Assembly: GCA_053919585.1 (NCBI GenBank)
Contig: CM132820.1
Reading direction: 5' to 3' (one strand)
Source of the DNA: Euprymna scolopes
Taxonomy: Eukaryota
DNA length: 63,870 bases
In this document: positions 7,796-62,013 of the stretch, in pieces
Position numbering within the stretch: position 1 is the first letter of the stretch
Layout: every line of letters begins with the position of its first letter
The notes under the pieces: generated by a model
Databases searched by the model: none
What the model saw: only the letters and a program-made list of their open reading frames with translations
Told to the model about the DNA's origin: nothing
Position numbers and translations under genes: made by a program

Positions 7796-7922
7796 TAGGT
7801 TGTTGCATAAGTTCCCGTCGTTCTTTAAGAAAATCAAAGAATTTTAACAGCAAAAGTAAGCTCCAAGTTTTTTGTGTAAATCCCATCGACTGAAGGTGGC
7901 GTGAAATTGTCGCAAAATCATA
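7793..7922 (-). mobile_element. Internally deleted mariner fragment
   Basis: TATTAGGTTGTTGCATAAG TIR; ATISRHLQSMGFTQK helix-turn-helix peptide. Confidence 0.65.
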
Positions 7923-7978
7923 CTTCAAAAAGATTAAGAACAACACTAATCTGATAGTCCCGGCAGATAAAACAATGA

Positions 7979-8326
7979 ATTTAATAATTATTATAGTAAA
8001 TAATTATGTCAGCCTCTTTAAGAACCTCGTTTCTTATCGTTGAGCACTTTCAGTTGAATTAAAAAGTCGGTCAATTTAGCTCTTATGCACAGATCATCAT
8101 ATAATGATTAGATCACTCTAACTGACATTAAAAACCTTAAAAAATAAATAGTTAAAATTCAACAGCATTTCTCGCAGTTAAGCGAAGCCGAATGGATATG
8201 GCCCTTGCTAATGAAGTCAGAGATGGCTTTTGTCACCGGGTTCGAATCTATCGATTGGTGTTAATCATGACACCCTGCACTGAAGATTCCCAAAAGGATG
8301 AAAGACTAGTGTCTGTAGGTATTTGA

Positions 8327-8332
<6 letters not shown>
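7979..8332 (+). ncRNA. tRNA-headed hammerhead element, family A monomer (SINE-retrozyme-like)
   Basis: A box AAGCCGAATGG (8185), B box GGGTTCGAATC (8238); HHR 8274-8319 CCTGCA-CTGAAGA-TTCC CAAAA GGAT-GAAA-GACTAGTG-TC-TGTAGG; homologous to 20441-20960 and 48975-49133. Confidence 0.85.
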
Positions 8333-8394
<62 letters not shown>

Positions 8395-14446: not shown

Positions 14447-14785
14447 TTTTATAATAAGAATACAAAAGCCAGAATGAAATAGCAGCCAAACAGTACATAA
14501 CCTAACCGTTAATACTTGTAAATGAAGTAGCTATTAGAAAATAATGCAATGATAATTTTTTTAAAATGAAACACCGCCAAATAAATGCCAGTCCACCTCT
14601 TTAATATCTTCCCCATCCCATCCGTGAAGCCTTGATCCTAAGAATCCCTACTGCAAATTCTGCAATTTGGCTTTTGTAACTTATATTTTCGAATTCTGAA
14701 AGACATTTTACATGTAAATCGTCTTATCCATTCTAAGCCTTATGAAAAACCCCATTAAATTTGCTAAGTGCGAAACGAGAATGAA

Positions 14786-17700
14786 ATAAGAGCAAAATAG
14801 CACCTCACCTAACTGTTAGAAATAAGAGCCAAATAGCATCTCACTTAACTGTTAGAAATAAGATCCAAATAGCACCTCACCTAACTGTTAGAAATAAGAG
14901 CCAAATAGCACCTCACCTAACTGTTAGAAATAAGAGCCAAATAGCACCTCACCTAACTGTTAGAAATAAGAGCCAAATAGCACCTCACCTAACTGTTAGA
15001 AATAAGAGCCAAATAGCACCTCACCTAACTGTTAGAAATAAGAGCCAAATAGCACCTCACCTAACTGTTAGAAATAAGAGCCAAATAGCACCTCACCTAA
15101 CTGTTAGAAATAAGAGCCAAATAGCACCTCACCTAACTGTTAGAAATAAGAGCCAAATAGCACCTCACCTAACTGTTAGAAATAAGAGCCAAATATCACC
15201 CCACCTAACTGTTAGAAATAAGAGCCAAATAGCATCTCACCTAACTGTTAGAAATAAGAGCCAAATAGCACCTCACCTAACTGTTAGAAATAAGAGCCAA
15301 ATAGCACCTCACCTGTTAGAAATAAGAGCCAAATAGCACCCCACCTTACTGTTAGAAATAAGAGGCAAATAGCACCCCACCTAACTGTTAGAAATAAGAG
15401 TCAAATAGCACCTCACCTAACTGTTAGAAATAAGAGCCAAATAGCACCCCACCTAACTGTTAGAAATAAGAGCCAAATAGCACCCCACCTAACTGTTAGA
15501 AATAAGAGCCAAATAGCACCTCACCTAACTGTTAGAAATAAGAGCCAAATAGCACCCCACCTAACTGTTAGAAATAAGAGCCAAATAGCACCCCACCTAA
15601 CTGTTAGAAATAAGAGCCAAATAGCACCTCACCTAACTGTTAGAAATAAGAGTCAAATAGCACCTCACCTAACTGTTAGAAATAAGAGCCAAATAGCACC
15701 CCACCTAACTGTTAGAAATAAGAGCCAAATAGCACCCCACCTAACTGTTAGAAATAAGAGCCAAATAGCACCTCACCTAACTGTTAGAAATAAGAGCCAA
15801 ATAGCACCTCACCTAACTGTTAGAAATAAGAGCCAAATATCACCCCACCTAACTGTTAGAAATAAGAGCCAAATAGCATCTCACCTAACTGTTAGAAATA
15901 AGAGCCAAATAGCACCTCACCTAACTGTTAGAAATAAGAGTCAAATAGCACCTCACCTAACTGTTAGAAATAAGAGTCAAATAGCACCTCACCTAACTGT
16001 TAGAAATAAGAGCCAAATAGCACCTCACCTAACTGTTAGAAATAAGAGTCAAATAGCACCTCACCTAACTGTTAGAAATAAGAGCCAAATAGCACCTCAC
16101 CTAACTGTTAGAAATAAGAGTCAAATAGCACCCCACCTAACTGTTAGAAATAAGAGTCAAATAGCACCTCACCTAACTGTTAGAAATAAGAGCCAAATAG
16201 CACCTCACCTAACTGTTAGAAATAAGAGTCAAATAGCACCTCACCTAACTGTTAGAAATAAGAGTCAAATAGCACCTCACCTAACTGTTAGAAATAAGAG
16301 CCAAATAGCACCTCACCTAACTGTTAGAAATAAGAGTCAAATAGCACCTCACCTAACTGTTAGAAATAAGAGCCAAATAGCACCTCACCTAACTGTTAGA
16401 AATAAGAGTCAAATAGCACCCCACCTAACTGTTAGAAATAAGAGTCAAATAGCACCTCACCTAACTGTTAGAAATAAGAGCCAAATAGCACCTCACCTAA
16501 CTGTAAGAAATAAGAGTCAAATAGCACCTCACCTAACTGTTAGAAATAAGAGCCAAATAGCACCTCACCTAACTGTTAGAAATAAGAGCCAAATATCACC
16601 CCACCTAACTGTTAGAAATAAGAGCCAAATATCACCTCACCTAACTGTTAGAAATAAGAGCCAAATAGCACCTCACCTAACTGTTAGAAATAAGAGCCAA
16701 ATATCACCCCACCTAACTGTTAGAAATAAGAGCCAAATATCACCTCACCTAACTGTTAGAAATAAGAGCCAAATATCACCCCACCTAACTGTTAGAAATA
16801 AGAGCCAAATAGCACCTCACCTAACTGTTAGAAATAAGAGTCAAATAGCACCTCACCTAACTGTTAGAAATAAGAGCCAAATAGCACCTCACCTAACTGT
16901 TAGAAATAAGAGCCAAATAGCACCTCACCTAACTGTTAGAAATAAGAGCCAAATAGCACCTCACCTAACTGTTAGAAATAAGAGCCAAATAGCACCCCAC
17001 CTAACTGTTAGAAATAAGAGCCAAATATCACCCCACCTAACTGTTAGAAATAAGAGCCAAATAGCATCTCACCTAACTGTTAGAAATAAGAGCCAAATAG
17101 CACCTCACCTAACTGTTAGAAATAAGAGCCAAATAGCATCTCACCTAACTGTTAGAAATAAGAGCCAAATAGCACCTCACCTAACTGTTAGAAATAAGAG
17201 CCAAATAGCACCTCACCTAACTGTTAGAAATAAGAGCCAAATAGCACCTCATCTAACTGTTAGAAATAAGAGTCAAATAGCACCTCACCTAACTGTTAGA
17301 AATAAGAGCCAAATAGCACCTCACCTAACTGTTAGAAATAAGAGCCAAATAGCACCTCACCTAACTGTTAGAAATAAGAGCCAAATATCACCCCACCTAA
17401 CTGTTAGAAATAAGAGCCAAATAGCATCTCACCTAACTGTTAGAAATAAGAGCCAAATAGCACCTCACCTAACTGTTAGAAATAAGAGCCAAATAGCACC
17501 TCACCTGTTAGAAATAAGAGCCAAATAGCACCCCACCTAACTGTTAGAAATAAGAGCCAAATAGAATCTCACCTGTTAGAAATAAGAGCCAAATAGCACC
17601 CTACCTAACTGTTAGAAATAAGAGCAAAATAGCACCTCACCTAACTGTTAGAAATAAGAGCCAAATAGCACCTCACCTAACTGTTAGAAATAAGAGCCAA

Positions 17701-18040
17701 ATAGCACCTCACCTAACTGTTAGAAATAAGAGCCAAATAGCACCCCACCTAACTGTTAGAAATAAGAGCCAAATAGCACCCCACCTAACTGTTAGAAATA
17801 AGAGTCAAATAGCACCTCACCTAACCGTTAGAAATAAGAGCCAAATAGAATCTCACCTTACCGTTAGAAATAAGAGCCAAATAGAATCTCACCTTACCGT
17901 TAGAAATAAGAGCCAAATAGAATCTCACCTTACCGTTAGAAATAAGAGCCAAAATAGAATCTCACCTTACCGTTAGAAATAAGAGCCAAATAGTATCTAA
18001 CCTTACAGTTAGAAATAAGAGCCAAATAGTATCTAACCTA
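14786..18040. repeat. 36-bp tandem satellite/minisatellite, ~90 copies (GAAATAAGAGCCAAATAGCACCTCACCTAACTGTTA)
   Basis: Head-to-tail units with no spacers; diverged edge units; a single diverged relative at ~14476-14512. Confidence 0.97.
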
Positions 18041-18419
18041 GCTGTGGTCACTGACAGACACTGGGCATGGAAGCAGAACTCTGCGCCGGCCCACAAGTCT
18101 AAAGAGACCTAGGCTTGGCTTCAGAAGGAGTGCTGCGACTTTGTACTTTTCTCTCACTACCTCTCTTCTCTGCCAATCTGAACCTGTTGGGTTACTTCGA
18201 TTGGTCATCTGTCGAGAACATCACTAACATGACCTCCCACAACACCAAAGCCAGCCTGATTATCGCATCCATCGAGTATTCACCGAGCTCCCGTGTAAAA
18301 AGCATGCTCCCAGTTCTAGTAAAACAAAGAGATGTTAGAACATAATGTAAAAATAAATTTTTAAATTAAAAAAACAAAAAAACAAACAAAAAACTACTAC
18401 ACCACCGAATGAATATAAG

Positions 18420-19400: not shown

Positions 19401-20440
19401 AGAATAAAATTCTATTTCAGCAAACGACTGAGAGGTATGAGATCATTTTTTATTAAATCGTTATTTCAATCATCACTCGTAACGTCAAAACTAAGGGCAG
19501 GGTACCCCCAACGCGCACCACAGATTTACCCCCCATATGTAACACGGGATAACTGTAATTCAATGTAATATTATCATCTTAACCTTTTTCTTATTTAAAA
19601 GAAGGAGCTTCAAATAAACTGCTCATATTTTTTTACAATTTTTTTATAGCATACGAACATAATGAAAATGCGAGACTAAAATCGTGTTTACATTATACAC
19701 GTTTTAAAACAACGCTCCTATGTAGTGTACGTACTGTCTATTGGCTTTTTGTCCCACATAGTAGCAAGTGGTGTGAGGTACGCGCGTGCGCACGCATGCC
19801 GAAAAGGCACGCTGTCGGTCCGTAGATCGTCCAGCTAGGAGGCTGGTCTGAAAAAGGAGAAACCGCTTATTGCTCTTTCTTTTATAGGTGTTTCCGGTGG
19901 TCTTTTGCGCATGCGTGGATTTCCTTTGAAAGGGGAAGTGACGTTGTCCATGCGTGCGTGTATGTGAGTACATGTGTGTACGTTAGCGTGTGTTTGTGTA
20001 CACGTGAATGTGAGTGTATGTACGCGAACGTGAATATATGTACGTGTGTGGACGTGGGCGCGTATGTTTGTGTGCGCGTATGTATATGACAAGTAATATA
20101 GCTTGAAATGTGAACGCGTGTTTTTGTGTGGGACTAGAAAAGGCTCGCGCAGTAGTTACTTTTTTGAAGCTGTAAACGTACCCATGTTTTAAAATTTTAG
20201 CAAAAATCAAATAATAGTCATACTTTCCTGAAATTTTCGATATTTATTCATTTTCAAAATAACTTACATAATAAACGTCGGTCTCGTTAAACATGAGAGG
20301 AAATATTCTCAGGTGTTCTAACCCCCTATATTTATGTTACGAAAACTACAAAAATAAATAGAAATTTCAACATTTTTTAAAGCTAAAAAGATCAAATAAT
20401 TAAAAAAATAGTTACTTCTGGATATATATATATATATCCA

Positions 20441-20958
20441 GAATTTTTAAACATTTTTAATTTAAATGTTCATTACGTCAGGCAGACAGTGATCAAATCG
20501 TTATACGATGATCTACGCATAAGAGCTAAATTGACAGACTTTTTAATTCAACAGAAAGTGCTCAACGATAAGAAACGAATTTCTTAAAGGGGCTGTCATA
20601 ATTATTTTTTTACTATAATAATTAAATACCTACAGACACTAGTGTTTCATCCTTTCGGGATTCTTCAGTGCAGGGTGTCACGATTACTACCAGTCGAACG
20701 ATTCGAACCCCGCGACACGAGACATCTCTGGCTCGATTAGCGGAGACCGTATCCATTCGGCTACTATTAACCGTGTGAAATAGCGTTGAATTTTTAAACA
20801 TTTTAATTTAAATGTTCATTACGTCAGACAGACAGTGATCAAATCGTTATACGATGATCTACGCATAAGAGCTAAATTGACCGACTTTTTAATTCAACAG
20901 AAAGTGCTCAACGATAAGAAACGAATTTCTTAAAGGGGCTGTCATAATTATTTTTTTT

Positions 20959-20960
<2 letters not shown>
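20441..20960 (-). ncRNA. Family A tRNA-HHR element as a 1.5-mer partial tandem (period 347 bp), intact hammerhead
   Basis: Direct repeat 20441-20612 / 20788-20960; A box TAGCCGAATGG (20763-20753), B box GGGTTCGAATC (20710-20700); HHR 20674-20629 CCTGCA-CTGAAGA-ATCC CGAAA GGAT-GAAA-CACTAGTG-TC-TGTAGG. Confidence 0.9.
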
Positions 20961-21030
<70 letters not shown>

Positions 21031-21164
21031 CAATAAGTTTACCAAGGTAAACAAAATGGTAAACTTAAAATATATTATAAATATTAAAGAGTTAATATTT
21101 ACAAGTAAAATAAACTCAGCCAGATGTAAAAGCTCAATAAAACCGAAAAGGAAGTAGAGCTTAT

Positions 21165-38494: not shown

Positions 38495-38720
38495 TTCGAC
38501 CGTTCAGAAAGCCGTTGAGGTTCGAGAAAGGTTTGAACTGAAACGAACACAGTTCAAGCGTAACGGTCACATTTCAGTAAACATGGTTAATTCATTACTC
38601 ACTCAGCATCAGCCGTATAGGGTAATGGTGAGAACCTTGACAGTCATTTGGGCGGTCGGCTTTTGCCTATCTAGCCGCGCTGATGAGCTGCGAAACAGTA
38701 CTGTATGTGGATACCCATAT
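38495..38720 (+). ncRNA. Family B hammerhead unit fused upstream of the PLE ORF
   Basis: HHR 38675-38710 CCGCG-CTGATGA-GCTGC-GAAA-CAGTACTG-TA-TGTGG; tRNA A-box-like TAGGGTAATGG at 38618; nested hairpins 38500-38568. Confidence 0.75.
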
Positions 38721-38780
38721 ATATTTTATAACTTAGAATATTGGACCAGGAAAAATACCCCTAACCACTTCAACATTTTA

Positions 38781-40280
38781 ATGGGATCGACGGACTCGAC
38801 TCAGGTCACTGATCTAGTTGGCCTTTTCCTTTTAAATGAAATACATTGTATACTCCATAAACAATTCAAACTTGAAGGAGGGCTATATAGAGATGATGCA
38901 CTTTTCATAACGAATTCTACTAATAAAAATTATGAAAATGCAATTAAAGCTCTACATACATTATTTAAAAATTATGGACTTAGTATAAAAATCGACCCTA
39001 ATAAAAAAATTGTTAATTTCTTAGACATAACCTTAAATCTTGAAAATTCTACCTTTGAACCATACCATAAACCTAACCAATCACTTCTATATGTCCACAA
39101 TCAATCAAACCACCCTAAATCAATATTAAAATCAATAGTTCCCAATATCGCTCTAAGAATTTCTAGACTGTCTTCTACTAAATCAATATTTACCAAAAAT
39201 GAAAAATACTATAATGAAGCCCTTAAAAACTCTGGATATAATTCACAAATTAAATTCATAAATGAAAATGATAGAAACATAAACTGCATTAAAAATAAAC
39301 CTATTAAGAGCGTAATAACATATAATATGGCAATGTCTTCCCGTATACGAGTTAAGAAAAATAACCAGGAGACAAAAAAAGATAAAACCAAACTACAAAT
39401 ATTAGATAATAATATAAATAAACAACAAACTAAAACCCGCAAACGTAAGAATAGACACAAGGAGATCCTATGGTTCAACCCCCCGTATTCCAAAAACCTA
39501 GAAACAAACATAGCTAGAGAATTTTTTAAAATATTAGATAAGAACTTTAAAGCCCCCCATAGATATAATAAGATTTTCAATAAGAACACAATTAAAGTCT
39601 CTTACTCTACTATGCCTAACCTTCATCAGAAAATAATTAGCTCTAATAATAATAAAATTAATAAACTACAAAATGCAACTATACAAAATACATCGGACTG
39701 TAACTGTAGAAGAAAAAATAAATGTCCCCTACAAGGCTCATGTAAAATTAAAAATGTTATCTATAGCTGCACAGTATCAAAAACTCCAAATATACAAGAA
39801 CCTATCAACAGCCATAACTCAACTACAGAATTAAATAATAACACCAACTTAAATCAATCTACCGATCAATTATTAACCAACCCACCACATTATAATCCAA
39901 CAATAGACCTAACGGAAAATAATCATAATAATCAAGAGGTAATATATATTGGTTCCACATCTGGCCCAATAAAACATAGAATTTCAACGCACAAACATTC
40001 TTTTAAAAATAACTCTCTATCAAACCAAACTACTCTATCCAACTATATTTGGCAACTAAAAAATAGCAATATTTCTTTCAACTTAAAATGGCAAATAATT
40101 GAGACTTGCAAATCATATAAACCAGGAGATAAATTTTGTACATTATGTACAAAAGAAACCGTAAAAATTTTAAAATATGAAGATATAAAAAGCACAACCA
40201 AACTAGTAAATTCAAGACACGAGCTTCTATCGTGTAATCATAAACGTTGGTTTAAATTTAATAAATATAAACCACCTTAA
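38781..40280 (+). CDS. 5'-truncated Penelope-like RT + GIY-YIG endonuclease, frame still open
   Basis: MGSTDSTQVTDLVGL, GLYRDDAL, VNFLDITL, WFNPPYS, CNCRRKNKCPLQGSC linker, VIYSC...YIGST, RISTH, CTLC, LVNSRHE..CNH. The first ~66 aa of ORF 38583 are non-coding read-through. Confidence 0.9.
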   Translation: MGSTDSTQVTDLVGLFLLNEIHCILHKQFKLEGGLYRDDALFITNSTNKNYENAIKALHTLFKNYGLSIKIDPNKKIVNFLDITLNLENSTFEPYHKPNQSLLYVHNQSNHPKSILKSIVPNIALRISRLSSTKSIFTKNEKYYNEALKNSGYNSQIKFINENDRNINCIKNKPIKSVITYNMAMSSRIRVKKNNQETKKDKTKLQILDNNINKQQTKTRKRKNRHKEILWFNPPYSKNLETNIAREFFKILDKNFKAPHRYNKIFNKNTIKVSYSTMPNLHQKIISSNNNKINKLQNATIQNTSDCNCRRKNKCPLQGSCKIKNVIYSCTVSKTPNIQEPINSHNSTTELNNNTNLNQSTDQLLTNPPHYNPTIDLTENNHNNQEVIYIGSTSGPIKHRISTHKHSFKNNSLSNQTTLSNYIWQLKNSNISFNLKWQIIETCKSYKPGDKFCTLCTKETVKILKYEDIKSTTKLVNSRHELLSCNHKRWFKFNKYKPP

Positions 40281-40309: not shown

Positions 40310-40346
<37 letters not shown>

Positions 40347-40432: not shown

Positions 40433-40463
<31 letters not shown>

Positions 40464-47795: not shown

Positions 47796-48974
47796 ATAAA
47801 CATCATATATATAAGGATAATAGTACGCCATATATATAACAAAAGACCATTATTTACTGAAGTGAAAGGAAAACCCGGGGGAACTTTACCCAAAAATAAA
47901 TCTATATTTTTTGTGTGTATTGATAGTCTTATCAACACCCCTTTTTTCTATTTATTTAAAAAGAAAATACAACTTTGTTATTTCTGAGTCGTGGAATTGC
48001 ATTCATCTACAAAAGATCTAGCTAATGTGCATATTTTTTTATTGTTTTTAATTAATTTCCTATTAGTTTTTTTTCGGTTCTCTTCTACGATGATCATCTT
48101 TATTTAACTATTACGTGTAATTATATTCATACAGATATTTTATGATTATATTTGCATAATATTTGCGTAGAAATGAAGAAAATCAAATTTACTGTGTGTT
48201 TATCGTGTTGCCATAACAACGTGACGTAGCCAAGGACGGTAGTGGACGTGAGTATGTGTGCGTGTATGCGCGTGTTTTCGTGCTGTGTTTATATTATGCA
48301 TGTTGTTTCGTATCTTCTCAACTTTTTCAAATCTATGTGTACAGTAATACAAACTCGTTTTTCGAGCTGAATAAATATGTTACATTGAATAAAAACACGA
48401 AAAATATATCCAGTTTGGTAGAAAAGTAACTTATCTTGCCTTTAATAACATTTATTTGTTATATATTTGTTTTTTGACAACTTTTTCGAATCTATGTGTA
48501 CAGTAATACAAACCCGAAATGAAAAGACCACGAGTGAACGCGCGTTTTATATAAAAATAAGAATTTTTAAATTTTATCTTTCTAGCTTTAAAAAAAAGTT
48601 TTTAAAATTTTATCAGCCGGCATAATTTATTTTTAAATATTGAAAAATTTCAGGAAAATTAATTTTTGCTAGATTTTCAAAACATTGTTTTCGTGTTGTG
48701 TGTACGTATCTGCGGCTAGCACCAGAATGGCGGCCGTGATGTCGTAGGTTAGATTGTTAGATTGTGTAAGTTTCGTATTTTTTTAATTTGTAAATAACAA
48801 GTTATGAAAAAATTAAACCCTTCCAAGATGGACAATAAATAAAGCCATAATATTTTATGGTAAAGGTAAGAGCGTAGGAACCATAGTTTTTTAGGAGATG
48901 TGATTATTGGATTAACCAATCAGAAATCGTCTGTGGCACGCACATCTCTGTTTATATATATATATATATATATA

Positions 48975-49133
48975 TAATTATTTTCTGTAATGATTATTAT
49001 ATACCTACTGACACTAGTGTTTCATCCTTTTGGGAATCATCAATGCAGGGTGTCATGATTAATACCAGTCGATATATTCGAACCCGGCAACGAAGCCATC
49101 TCTGACTCCATTAGCAAGGACCAAATCGGCCAC
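48975..49133 (-). ncRNA. Family A tRNA-HHR element (5' side lost in gap)
   Basis: B box GGGTTCGAATA; HHR 49049-49004 CCTGCA-TTGATGA-TTCC CAAAA GGAT-GAAA-CACTAGTG-TC-AGTAGG. Confidence 0.8.
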
Positions 49134-59614: not shown

Positions 59615-60151
59615 TTCCTTCCTCATAGGTTCCGAAACGGCTGAGCCTATCTTTTTCAAATATCACACAAAGCTAATTTATATGTCTTGCAGTGTTCTTA
59701 GATAGTTTTTATACAGAAATTCATACGATAAGTATAGAAAATCGAAAAAATCCGATCTTAAAAATAGTCTTTCTCTTATAGATAAAAAAGAATTGTTACC
59801 ATGGAATATTTTACGTAACACCGGAGTAACCTTGGTCGATGTAACGTAAAATATTCCCATGTAAAAATTCTTTTTTATATCTGTAAGAGAAAAAGACTAT
59901 TTTTAAGATCGTCAAGCCCTGACGTGATATTGTAAACAAACATAGAAGGAATTTGATGAACGACATTATCATTATTACTTTTTTATTTATTTATTTTTTT
60001 TTTTGGCGAATTAGTCCATTGGGTAAATTACTCCTCATAATATATAACAATCAGTAGAGAATTAATTCTATAATAATTCATATGCGATCTGCATACATTA
60101 AAATATGTTTAAGCATATTGTATGACCAGGCAATGACGGGCGGCTAGCTAG
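59551..60151 (+). mobile_element. Non-autonomous Helitron
   Basis: A|TCTCTACTATTATATAAAA start, (GT)n, internal inverted repeat, CCAGGCAATGACGGG..CTAG|T end. Confidence 0.7.
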
Positions 60152-60154
60152 TAC

Positions 60155-60349
60155 TGGTGGACAAATGTTTGTTTAAATAGACATTTGGCAAGATAATTTA
60201 CGGGCGCCGCTCCTGTAGGTCGGTCGGTAGAGCTGCTGACTGTTAAACGCTATGGTTCTAAGTTCTTCAATCCTCGTCTTGGAAGAGGTGCTAGTCTAGC
60301 GGCCCTGATGAGTTATGATACAACGAAAGAGGACTGTATGTCGATGACT

Positions 60350-60354
<5 letters not shown>
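60155..60354 (+). ncRNA. Family B tRNA-headed hammerhead element
   Basis: tRNA-like 60209-60285 (TAGGTCGGTCGGTAGAGC, GACTGTTAA loop, degenerate B box); HHR 60292-60350 CGGCC-CTGATGA-GTT..AAC-GAAA-GAGGACTG-TA-TGTCG; followed by (TA)n. Confidence 0.7.
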
Positions 60355-60416
<62 letters not shown>

Positions 60417-60875
60417 TACAAGCATGTTTACATGCATGCATTCTTACGTACATACATTGATAGATAGATATTTTCCAGATTATATTTTACGCGAACGCCA
60501 TTTAAAAAAAAAACTATCCAAAGGTCAATGAGTATCAAACATTTCGGGTGATTCTGGCATTTAGTTTATTTTTTATTTGTTAATCACACGTGTGCGAGCA
60601 TTTTAAAAATGGCCACTACATGAGAACATTGTTTTGATTCGACGATAATTTAAACACGATATTAGTTTCTCGTTTTTCATTATTTTCACACGCTGAAAAA
60701 AAAAAAAAATCAAGAATGATCTCCCAGCTTTGAAAAGGTGTGACTTTTCCTCCAATCTTCAATAAAAAAAAGTGTTTTTTTTTTTCATTTGAATGGTACA
60801 AAAGTTATGACTATAATATTAATCAAGAGGGGAATTCTATAGTTTACTTGGGAGGTCCCTATGTAGTTATATCTA

Positions 60876-61119: not shown

Positions 61120-61287
61120 AGGTTCTACAATTTTTACCTAGTCACAGGTCGCAACAAACCATTGTTGCAAAATCCTTGTTAACCTCTACCTTTCAGTGGA
61201 GAAATTTTCCACACTTTGCAACATTGATCTGCAGACCTTGTGCATTTTTTTTTCCCCCTTTTTTTCTTCTGTTATTTTTTTATTATT

Positions 61288-62013
61288 ATGGCCGCGGAAC
61301 AAATGTCTTCCCTTGAGGATTCCTTAGGAATGCAAGAAAAACCGGATCACCTTCTTGAGGCCCTTTTGGATACGGAGGAAAGATATAAAAACATTATCGG
61401 ATACACATTAGAAAAATTAAAGAAAGGAGTCGCAGTGGATGCATGTGCCTTGAAGAACACCACAGACAACATAAACGAGTGGCTTTCTAAAGTAGACCAA
61501 GTTCAGGAAAACTTGGTTAAATTCCTTCCTAGAGATAGGGTGGCACCGCATGCTTATGACCTTATCAAATTCAAAGAGGAGGTGAAAAGAGATTTACAAA
61601 ACTTAACTGCAGAGGTTCACAAGGATGATTCTCCTCCCTTCATGCTCCCAAATGTAATGCAGCCATCTCAAGTTGACACCTCTATGTTTAAGCCTAAGGT
61701 CAAATGCCCTAGTTTTGATGGCCTGGACTTTGAGAACAAATTTGCATTGAGAGATTTTCTCACTAGGTTTGACTATTGCACTTCGGGATTAAAATCAAGG
61801 AGAGAAAAATTAACCTACCTCAAGACTTGTGTTACGGGACGTCCGTTTCGGCTAATACATCATCTAGAGGAGACATCCAATAATTATGATGCCGCAATAA
61901 AAATTCTTAAGGATAATTATTGGGATGAAGAGGGCATTAGAGAGGAGATATTCTCTAGCCTATTCAAACTGTCCACCCGAGGCAGGTATGATATTGAATA
62001 CCAGTTTGGGTGA
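61288..62013 (+). CDS. BEL/Pao gag (DUF1759-like), C-terminally truncated
   Basis: KVKCPSFDG, FLTRFD, EKLTYLKTCVTG, NYDAAIKILKDNY; no zinc knuckles before the stop. Confidence 0.8.
   Translation: MAAEQMSSLEDSLGMQEKPDHLLEALLDTEERYKNIIGYTLEKLKKGVAVDACALKNTTDNINEWLSKVDQVQENLVKFLPRDRVAPHAYDLIKFKEEVKRDLQNLTAEVHKDDSPPFMLPNVMQPSQVDTSMFKPKVKCPSFDGLDFENKFALRDFLTRFDYCTSGLKSRREKLTYLKTCVTGRPFRLIHHLEETSNNYDAAIKILKDNYWDEEGIREEIFSSLFKLSTRGRYDIEYQFG

What the first reader, a model, noticed from the sequence alone, without database searches (positions are those of the whole stretch)
20441..20787. Whole AT-rich monomer lacks TTTT on its sense strand, consistent with Pol III terminator avoidance
Across the full 347-bp period the plus strand has several T5-T7 runs and about nine A3 runs but no A4. 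The transcribed minus strand therefore has no T4. The 7979-8332 copy has only one T4, at a position where the other copies differ. Pol III terminates at T4 or longer, so this asymmetry is what is needed to transcribe through a whole unit to the next ribozyme.
Basis: partly seen in the sequence, partly recalled or inferred. Interest (0 to 1): 0.75.

Follow-up and report, generated by a model that had tools for sequence, protein, structure and literature searches.

The report
T-run-free hammerhead retrozyme with promoter boxes
This is one copy of a very abundant, non-coding jumping element that carries tRNA-gene-type promoter boxes and a self-cutting hammerhead RNA. Its RNA strand does lack the TTTT stop signals of RNA polymerase III, but the statistics are only borderline and the design is already known from blood flukes.

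Summary
The sense (minus) strand of 20441-20787 has nine T3 runs and no T4+. The opposite strand has T5, T5, T5 and T7. Copy 7979-8334 has one sense T4, made by two C-to-T changes in a decayed copy.

The depletion is modest:
- P = 0.08 against shuffles.
- About 4.5% of composition-matched 347-nt stretches of this window have no T4+ (their mean is 3.6).
- The run-length contrast gives P = 0.03, or 0.01 against the window's own run lengths. I chose both tests after seeing the data.

The majority forms of the family in one DNA run and two RNA-library runs are also T4-free.

The unit is an AT-rich tail, then an A box and a B box 54 nt apart, then an intact type I hammerhead ribozyme. It is repeated tens of thousands of times, and the copies here are inserted at (TA)n tracts. 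This is the schistosome Sm-alpha / animal retrozyme design in what run labels and earlier notes suggest is a mollusc.

Avoidance of Pol III terminators is the best reading, at about 0.55. It is not shown: no strand, transcript end or polymerase data were available. This locus has only one ribozyme, so it cannot release a full unit itself.

The scan has already found this family and this class on other DNA of the same genome. It is a new member of a known kind, of modest interest.

The parts
20441..20957 (-). Array of 1.49 units. In sense order: partial tail, head, hammerhead, full tail. The two tail copies are 98% identical.
   Evidence: BLAST of the unit against the window; sequence; alignment
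20441..20787 (-). The 347-nt unit of the finding. Sense strand has no T4+, nine T3 runs, and A5, A5, A5 and A7 runs. GC is 38%.
   Evidence: Run counts; shuffles; genomic background
20753..20763 (-). A box-like motif TAGCCGAATGG. No common variant of the family falls in it.
   Evidence: Motif scan; variant table
20700..20709 (-). B box-like motif GGTTCGAATC, starting 54 nt after the start of the A box.
   Evidence: The composite A+B motif occurs only in family copies; chance expectation is 0.007 per window.
20629..20674 (-). Type I hammerhead ribozyme with an intact core (CUGAAGA ... GAAA ... GUC). Predicted cleavage is between C20635 and U20634.
   Evidence: Rfam RF00163, 25.6 bits, E 5.8e-4 in the local search, below the gathering score of 34; pattern scan gave 3 matches against 0.27 expected
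20441..20634 (-). AT-rich tail of 194 nt that follows the cleavage site. T is 38% yet there is no T4+.
   Evidence: tail alone: P 0.04-0.06; 4.2% of matched windows have none
20402..20408 (-). First sense-strand T run (T7) after the array, 33 nt past its 3' end. A possible Pol III stop for this locus.
   Evidence: RNA-library contig depth in X8 reaches this bin and falls to 5.5 beyond it (contigs only, so a weak hint).
20962..21028 (.). (TA)33 tract next to the sense-5' end of the array. A short (TA)8 palindrome at 20419-20443 lies at the other end.
   Evidence: Tandem repeat table; sequence
7979..8334 (+). Decayed single unit of the same family, about 83% identical. It runs from about 12 nt after one cleavage site to about 20 nt after the next, then into (TA)32. 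It has one sense T4 at 8228-8231. Hammerhead helix III is weakened (GAAAG).
48974..49133 (-). Third copy, head plus hammerhead, cut by an N stretch. It ends 37 nt after the cleavage site in a (TA)n tract. Core C3 is mutated to U. No sense T4.
60155..60354 (+). Unit of a second, unrelated hammerhead family (hammerhead at 60305-60342). It also ends in (AT)30 and lies in a 466-nt T4-free stretch on its own sense strand.
   Evidence: rank 19 of 1509

Best explanation
The 347-nt unit is a copy of a high-copy, non-autonomous retroelement of the Sm-alpha / animal non-LTR retrozyme kind. On one strand it carries an internal tRNA-gene-type promoter (A and B boxes), a self-cleaving type I hammerhead about 25 nt further on, and a 194-nt AT-rich tail.

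Proposed mechanism; every step is inferred, none is shown here:
1. In source arrays of two or more units, RNA polymerase III starts a few bases upstream of an A box.
2. It must read head, ribozyme, tail and the next head and ribozyme without stopping.
3. Lineages that acquire a T4+ run on the sense strand therefore stop producing full units and leave no offspring. That keeps the consensus T4-free while A runs remain free to occur.
4. The ribozymes cut the multimer into unit-length RNA, with the promoter at its 3' part.
5. That RNA may be circularised. A Penelope-like reverse transcriptase copies it into (TA)n microsatellites at variable phase.

This locus has one ribozyme. It is therefore a dead-end copy that inherited the T4-free state. 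A transcript started at its own boxes would run to the T7 at 20408-20402.
For: - Anatomy: the hammerhead has a complete core. An A box and a B box lie 54 nt apart on the same strand, and that composite is found only in family copies (chance 0.007).
- Constraint pattern: among the common family variants none falls in the A box, three fall in the B box (each under 10% of depth in the DNA run, though one reaches 54% in RNA run X8), and 13 fall in the 43 nt between them. The three variants inside the hammerhead lie at non-core positions. That pattern fits constraint on promoter boxes and ribozyme, not on a tRNA fold.
- Sense-strand T4+ count is 0. Expected is about 2 from shuffles and 3.6 from matched genomic stretches. 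Zero of 9 T3 runs are extended against 4 of 8 A runs. The antisense strand has T5, T5, T5 and T7.
- Majority forms in DNA run X1 and RNA-library runs X8 and X16 are T4-free.
- Copy 2's only T4 arises from two C-to-T changes, one at a CpG, in a decayed copy.
- A second, unrelated hammerhead unit in the window also lies in a long T4-free stretch on its sense strand.
- Contrast: the mussel retrozyme Mg353, described without promoter boxes, has about 8 sense T4+ runs and the axolotl units have 2-3 (counted by eye).
- Copy number and expression: 22,612 DNA contigs match at 80% or more. Contigs also occur in RNA libraries of four studies, some crossing the unit junction.
- Precedent: Sm-alpha elements have A and B boxes, are held to be Pol III transcribed and need tandem copies, because the promoter ends up at the 3' end of the cut unit (PMC6765202, PMC2576457).
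- (TA)n insertion bias of Penelope-like elements: PMC8557442.
Against: - Statistical support is weak: P = 0.08 by shuffles and about 0.045 by genomic background. The sharper run-length tests were chosen after seeing the data.
- All copies share one ancestor, so they count as one observation. The common variants add no power: about 1 T4-creating variant was expected and 0 were seen, P = 0.38.
- The head is not recognised as a tRNA by ARAGORN or by the Rfam tRNA model, even at E up to 10. Only the two boxes support a Pol III promoter.
- All RNA evidence is contigs, partly from poly(A)-selected libraries. There is no strand, no transcript ends and no polymerase assignment.
- One loose end shows an element fragment inside a polyadenylated transcript in antisense orientation, so some of the RNA signal comes from Pol II read-through.
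- The length of T run needed for Pol III termination in this animal is unknown.
- The unit is not unusually structured (z = -1.35).
Confidence: 0.55

Rival explanations
1. Chance plus common descent. The founder sequence happened to have no T4 on that strand, every copy inherited this, and there is no selection tied to a polymerase.
For: P is only 0.08 against shuffles and 0.045 against matched genomic stretches. About 1 in 20 comparable stretches is T4-free on a given strand. The variant test has no power. Long T4-free stretches that are neither satellite nor hammerhead element exist in the window.
Against: The depletion is on the strand that carries the promoter boxes and the ribozyme. Nine T3 runs all stop at three, while half of the A runs go on. 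A second, unrelated hammerhead unit shows the same on its sense strand. A mussel retrozyme described without boxes is full of T4+ runs.
Confidence: 0.28
2. The element is transcribed by Pol II, or by read-through from neighbours as proposed for other animal retrozymes. The lack of U runs would then reflect another constraint on the RNA, such as ribozyme folding, circular RNA stability, or template use by the reverse transcriptase.
For: Contigs of the family are plentiful in poly(A)- and oligo(dT)-selected libraries. One loose end is a polyadenylated transcript that holds an element fragment. Newt satellite 2 hammerhead repeats are held to be Pol II transcripts (PMC6765202). The papers read give no promoter for animal retrozymes.
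Against: The conserved A and B boxes at tRNA-gene spacing have no role under this reading. The sense strand carries two ATTAAA signals that would tend to truncate Pol II multimers (sequence). The internal A7 run can explain capture by oligo(dT). The predicted fold is unremarkable and the A runs are largely unpaired, so pairing constraints do not explain missing U runs.
Confidence: 0.15

Closest known systems
Schistosome Sm-alpha / Sj-alpha SINE-like hammerhead elements (Ferbeyre et al. 1998; Laha et al. 2000; as summarised in PMC6765202, PMC2770079, PMC2576457)
   Same: A unit of about 335-350 bp, internal Pol III A and B boxes followed on the same strand by a type I hammerhead, and tens of thousands of tandem and dispersed copies. 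After cleavage the promoter sits at the 3' part of the unit, so only tandem copies can propagate.
   Different: The host appears to be a mollusc by run labels and earlier notes, not a fluke. The hammerhead sequence is different and scores below the Rfam gathering threshold. Sm-alpha heads are recognised as tRNA-Gln-like by tRNAscan-SE (PMC2770079), whereas this head is not recognised as a tRNA at all. Sequence homology to Sm-alpha could not be tested. I could not read the 1998 paper, so I do not know whether T4 avoidance was already remarked on there.
Animal non-LTR retrozymes (Cervera and de la Pena 2020, PMC7229834)
   Same: A type I hammerhead inside short AT-rich tandem repeats of 170-400 bp, no LTR, PBS or PPT, abundant RNA, and co-occurrence with Penelope-like elements.
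   Different: That paper reports no internal promoter. The published mussel unit Mg353 has about eight sense-strand T4+ runs, so it cannot share a Pol III read-through design. Circular RNA was not testable here.
Pol III type 2 (tRNA-gene) transcription units and tRNA-derived SINEs
   Same: A and B boxes at tRNA-like spacing, no T4+ in the presumed transcribed strand, and a T run soon after the end of this locus.
   Different: There is no tRNA fold and no poly(A) or LINE-derived tail. The 3' end is a ribozyme plus 20-37 nt joined to (TA)n. The functional transcript would have to span more than one unit.

Membership tests
Sm-alpha-type SINE-like hammerhead element | Internal Pol III A box and B box upstream of the ribozyme on the same strand | tested here: met
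   TAGCCGAATGG at 20763-20753 and GGTTCGAATC at 20709-20700. The composite occurs only in family copies; chance 0.007.
Sm-alpha-type SINE-like hammerhead element | Type I hammerhead with an intact catalytic core | tested here: met
   RF00163 full-length match, 25.6 bits, E 5.8e-4 locally, below the gathering score of 34. The core CUGANGA / GAAA / GUC is present.
Sm-alpha-type SINE-like hammerhead element | High-copy tandem and dispersed repeats of about 330-350 bp | tested here: met
   22,612 DNA contigs at 80% identity or more. Joints that go back 346-348 nt show tandem copies. Three copies lie in this window.
Sm-alpha-type SINE-like hammerhead element | Multimeric transcripts cut to unit length in vivo | not testable with these tools
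   Only contigs were available. Some RNA-library contigs cross the unit junction, but strand and ends cannot be read.
Sm-alpha-type SINE-like hammerhead element | Sequence homology to Sm-alpha or Sj-alpha | not tested
   No Sm-alpha sequence was available by reference. The original paper is not held.
Animal non-LTR retrozyme | Type I hammerhead in short, low-GC tandem repeats without LTR, PBS or PPT | tested here: met
   347-nt unit with 38% GC, 1.49 units in tandem here, and tandem joints in the DNA run.
Animal non-LTR retrozyme | Expressed as small circular RNA | not testable with these tools
   Junction-crossing contigs in RNA libraries fit circles, multimers or contaminating DNA equally well.
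Pol III type 2 transcription unit | No T4+ on the sense strand within the transcribed region | tested here: met
   Zero T4+ in 20441-20957 on the minus strand. The majority family forms also have none. The significance is borderline.
Pol III type 2 transcription unit | Occupancy by, or dependence on, Pol III / TFIIIC | not testable with these tools
   No ChIP, inhibitor or raw stranded read data were available.
tRNA-derived SINE | Head recognisable as a tRNA | tested here: not met
   ARAGORN finds nothing, including at relaxed thresholds. The Rfam tRNA model gives no hit at E up to 10.
tRNA-derived SINE | Poly(A) or LINE-like 3' tail with target site duplications | tested here: not met
   The 3' ends of copies 2 and 3 lie 20-37 nt past the ribozyme cleavage site and abut (TA)n. 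The array's own 3' end lies at unit position 194 of its tail, next to the short (TA)8 palindrome. None has a poly(A) tail.

The most novel reading that the evidence does not exclude
In this animal a whole set of hammerhead retrozyme families may be self-promoting Pol III units that depend on read-through of several units. If so, purging of sense-strand T runs would be a sequence signature that separates Pol III-driven from Pol II-driven retrozymes. It would also help answer the open question of which polymerase feeds the animal retrozyme / circular RNA pathway.
Probability: 0.4. Interest if true: 0.5.

Novelty: new member of a known kind. Interest (0 to 1): 0.3.

Why it matters
None of the papers I could read names a promoter or a polymerase for animal retrozymes other than the fluke Sm-alpha elements. 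A strand-specific lack of Pol III stop signals, tied to conserved A and B boxes, would be a cheap sequence test for Pol III-driven families. It would also explain why only tandem copies can propagate. As it stands, this is a consistent but statistically weak check on one family of a known kind. The same genome holds several independent tRNA-headed families that could settle the question.

Tried and rejected
- Rfam at gathering thresholds found nothing in the window. The whole-window E-value search gave only low-complexity microRNA look-alikes.
- ARAGORN at default and relaxed settings, and the Rfam tRNA model, did not recognise the head as a tRNA.
- A metagenome scan for the ribozyme pattern found no further copies, so I could not assemble an independent set of family members.
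- The Ferbeyre 1998 paper is not held under three identifiers. Whether T4 avoidance was noted for Sm-alpha remains open. Searches for retrozyme plus polymerase III, and for hammerheads in cephalopods, gave nothing relevant.
- A test on common family variants (does any create a sense T4?) has no power: about 1 expected, 0 seen.
- The idea that a rod-like circular RNA fold explains the missing U runs is rejected. The unit's fold energy is ordinary (z = -1.35) and the A runs are largely unpaired.
- Pfam gave no hit for ORF 38583-40277, which a first-stage note calls a Penelope-like RT. I did not pursue it.
- The P of about 0.01 for the 1.5-copy array is rejected because it counts duplicated sequence twice.

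Full report
**What is at the coordinates.**
- The window is AT-rich eukaryotic DNA with many (TA)n tracts.
- BLAST of 20441-20787 against the window shows the unit followed by a 98%-identical half copy (20788-20957). There is an 83%-identical copy in the opposite orientation at 7985-8334, a head-plus-ribozyme fragment at 48974-49115, and two small fragments.
- Read on the minus strand, the unit has three parts:
  - a 194-nt AT-rich tail (20634 down to 20441);
  - a head with an A box-like TAGCCGAATGG (20763-20753) and a B box-like GGTTCGAATC (20709-20700);
  - a type I hammerhead (20674-20629).
- The hammerhead matches Rfam RF00163 over its full length at 25.6 bits. That is E 5.8e-4 in the local search and below the gathering score of 34.
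- All core bases are present, and the predicted cut is after GUC, between 20635 and 20634.
- A simple hammerhead pattern finds three sites in the window against 0.27 expected: this one, copy 2, and an unrelated one at 60305-60342.

**The observation.**
- It is correct in every detail. The + strand has nine A3 runs and no A4, and it has T5, T5, T5 and T7.
- The minus strand therefore has no T4+ over the unit, nor over the whole 517-nt array.
- A and T are equally frequent (109 and 107), so the asymmetry is in run length only.
- Copy 2, whose sense strand is the + strand, has one T4 at 8228-8231 in the head.
- The alignment shows this T4 comes from two C-to-T changes, one of them at a CpG. The copy has also lost several other CpGs and carries a weakened ribozyme helix III. 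It is decay after insertion.

**Is it more than chance?** Only modestly.
- Shuffles of the unit expect about 2 T4+ runs and give none in 8% of trials.
- The lower P for the 1.5-copy array counts the duplicated tail twice, so I discard it.
- Real sequence is richer in homopolymers than shuffles. Among 347-nt stretches of this same window with similar T content, the mean is 3.6 T4+ and 4.4-4.6% have none.
- Nine of nine T3+ runs stop at three, while four of eight A3+ runs go on (Fisher one-sided 0.029). In the window as a whole 40% of such runs go on (P 0.009). These two tests were framed after seeing the data.
- The T4-free stretch on the minus strand (20409-21052, 644 nt) ranks 9th of 1509.

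**Family level.**
- One DNA run and three RNA-library runs were laid on 20380-20800 at 80% likeness.
- The family is huge: 22,612 DNA contigs matched. Joints that go back 346-348 nt show tandem arrays.
- Applying the majority variants of X1, X8 or X16 gives consensus forms that are all free of sense T4.
- None of the 40 listed common variants, alone or in neighbouring pairs, makes one. Only about one was expected (P 0.38), so this adds no statistical weight.
- All copies descend from one founder. They therefore count as a single observation.

**What supports a Pol III reading beyond the run counts.**
- The A box plus B box composite at tRNA-gene spacing occurs only in family copies (chance 0.007 per window).
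- In the variant table no common variant falls in the A box and three fall in the B box. Each of those three is under 10% of depth in the DNA run, though one reaches 54% in RNA run X8.
- Thirteen fall in the 43 nt between the boxes. The three inside the ribozyme are at non-core positions.
- That is the pattern expected if the boxes and the ribozyme, and not a tRNA fold, are under constraint in the source copies.
- The head is indeed not recognised as a tRNA by ARAGORN or by the Rfam tRNA model.
- A second, unrelated hammerhead unit (60155-60354, + strand) also lies in a long T4-free stretch on its own sense strand (466 nt, rank 19 of 1509).
- By contrast, the published mussel retrozyme Mg353 is described without promoter boxes and is abundantly expressed. 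It has about eight T4+ runs on its sense strand, and the two axolotl units have two or three each. I counted these by eye in the supplement. A T4-free sense strand is thus not a general property of AT-rich retrozymes.

**RNA evidence.**
- It is weak. Contigs of the family occur in RNA libraries of four studies, including poly(A)-selected, oligo(dT) and rRNA-depleted ones. Some cross the unit junction.
- Contigs give no strand and no ends. One loose end shows an element fragment in antisense orientation inside a polyadenylated transcript, so part of the signal is ordinary read-through.
- In run X8, contig depth extends from the element into the 3' flank as far as the bin that holds the sense T7 (20408-20402). 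It drops to 5.5 in the next bin. This fits a stop at the first T run but cannot be relied on.

**How it most likely works.**
- The anatomy matches what reviews describe for schistosome Sm-alpha (PMC6765202, PMC2576457, PMC2770079): A and B boxes, a hammerhead, presumed Pol III transcription and multimeric transcripts.
- There, as here, the promoter ends up at the 3' part of the cut unit, so only tandem copies can propagate.
- The genomic copies in this window agree with that. Copy 2 runs from about 12 nt after one cleavage site to about 20 nt after the next. Copy 3 ends 37 nt after its cleavage site.
- Copies 2 and 3 and the unrelated unit at 60 kb end directly in (TA)n on the sense-3' side. 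The array has (TA)33 at its 5' side and a short (TA)8 palindrome at its 3' side.
- A (TA)n insertion bias is reported for Penelope-like elements (PMC8557442). Animal retrozymes are argued to be their non-autonomous partners (PMC7229834; bioRxiv 10.64898/2026.07.22.740005).
- In such a life cycle a sense-strand T4+ anywhere between the start site and the next ribozyme would end the lineage if Pol III is the polymerase.
- It applies to multi-unit source arrays only. The array at 20441-20957 has one ribozyme and cannot release a full unit.

**Rivals.**
- Chance plus common descent (about 0.28) is not excluded by a P near 0.05, given that many features were screened.
- Pol II or read-through transcription with some other constraint on U runs (about 0.15) fits the poly(A) library signal. 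It leaves the conserved boxes unexplained, and the predicted fold is unremarkable (z = -1.35).

**Comparison and novelty.**
- The element works like Sm-alpha and meets the structural criteria of animal non-LTR retrozymes. Homology to Sm-alpha and circular RNA were not testable.
- It is not a classical tRNA-derived SINE: it has no recognisable tRNA and no poly(A) or LINE-type tail.
- Earlier notes of this scan report the same 345-348-bp family, and several other tRNA-headed hammerhead families, on other pieces of this genome. They call it a 5.9-Gb mollusc genome. Run labels such as 'mollusc metagenome' agree. I did not verify the species.
- I found no held paper that describes hammerhead elements in cephalopods or that discusses T-run avoidance in such elements. 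The key 1998 paper could not be read.

**Verdict.**
- The element is a new member of a known kind, and interest is modest (0.3).
- The cross-family test set out under next steps would turn this hint into a result.

Noticed in passing
window 20380-20440: In poly(A) RNA-library run X8, contig depth continues from the element into its 3' flank up to the bin holding the sense T7 (20408-20402). It falls to 5.5 in the next bin. One X8 contig spans the element/flank junction at 20441 with a 3-nt deletion. This fits a transcript of this locus stopping at the first T run, but contigs cannot show ends.
   Followed up: partly
window 60005-60470: A second, unrelated hammerhead unit (hammerhead at 60305-60342, + strand) has an anticodon-loop-like CTGTTAA and a degenerate B box. 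It ends directly in (AT)30 and sits in a 466-nt T4-free stretch on its sense strand. That stretch begins right after a T12 run at 59993-60004.
   Followed up: partly
window 8331-8394, 48950-48975, 20962-21028, 60354-60413: Every hammerhead element copy in the window abuts a (TA)n tract. Copies 2 and 3 end at an AATTAT motif of the unit that merges into the (TA)n. This suggests priming by microhomology on TA repeats.
   Followed up: partly
window 20686-20687 and 20615-20625 (loose ends): Hundreds of contigs share the hammerhead but diverge on both sides: into other B box-bearing heads on one side, and into AT-rich sequence 10-20 nt after the cleavage site on the other. Several subfamilies or families therefore share nearly the same ribozyme.
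   Followed up: no
window 14783-18045: A 36-bp satellite of about 91 copies at 95% identity. It is the longest T4-free stretch on both strands of the window.
   Followed up: no
window 38583-40280: A 565-aa ORF that a first-stage note calls a Penelope-like RT with GIY-YIG. It gave no Pfam family at E up to 0.01. A T30 run (40313-40342) and an A26 run (40433-40458) follow it.
   Followed up: partly
window 7900-7985: Just upstream of copy 2 the + strand reads through a short peptide-like stretch ending in ...PADKT. A first-stage note takes this for a Penelope-like element coding fragment fused to the unit. I did not test it.
   Followed up: no
window 61240-62013: A 257-aa ORF with a DUF1759 match (E 1.2e-7), a domain found in retrotransposon-type polyproteins.
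   Followed up: no
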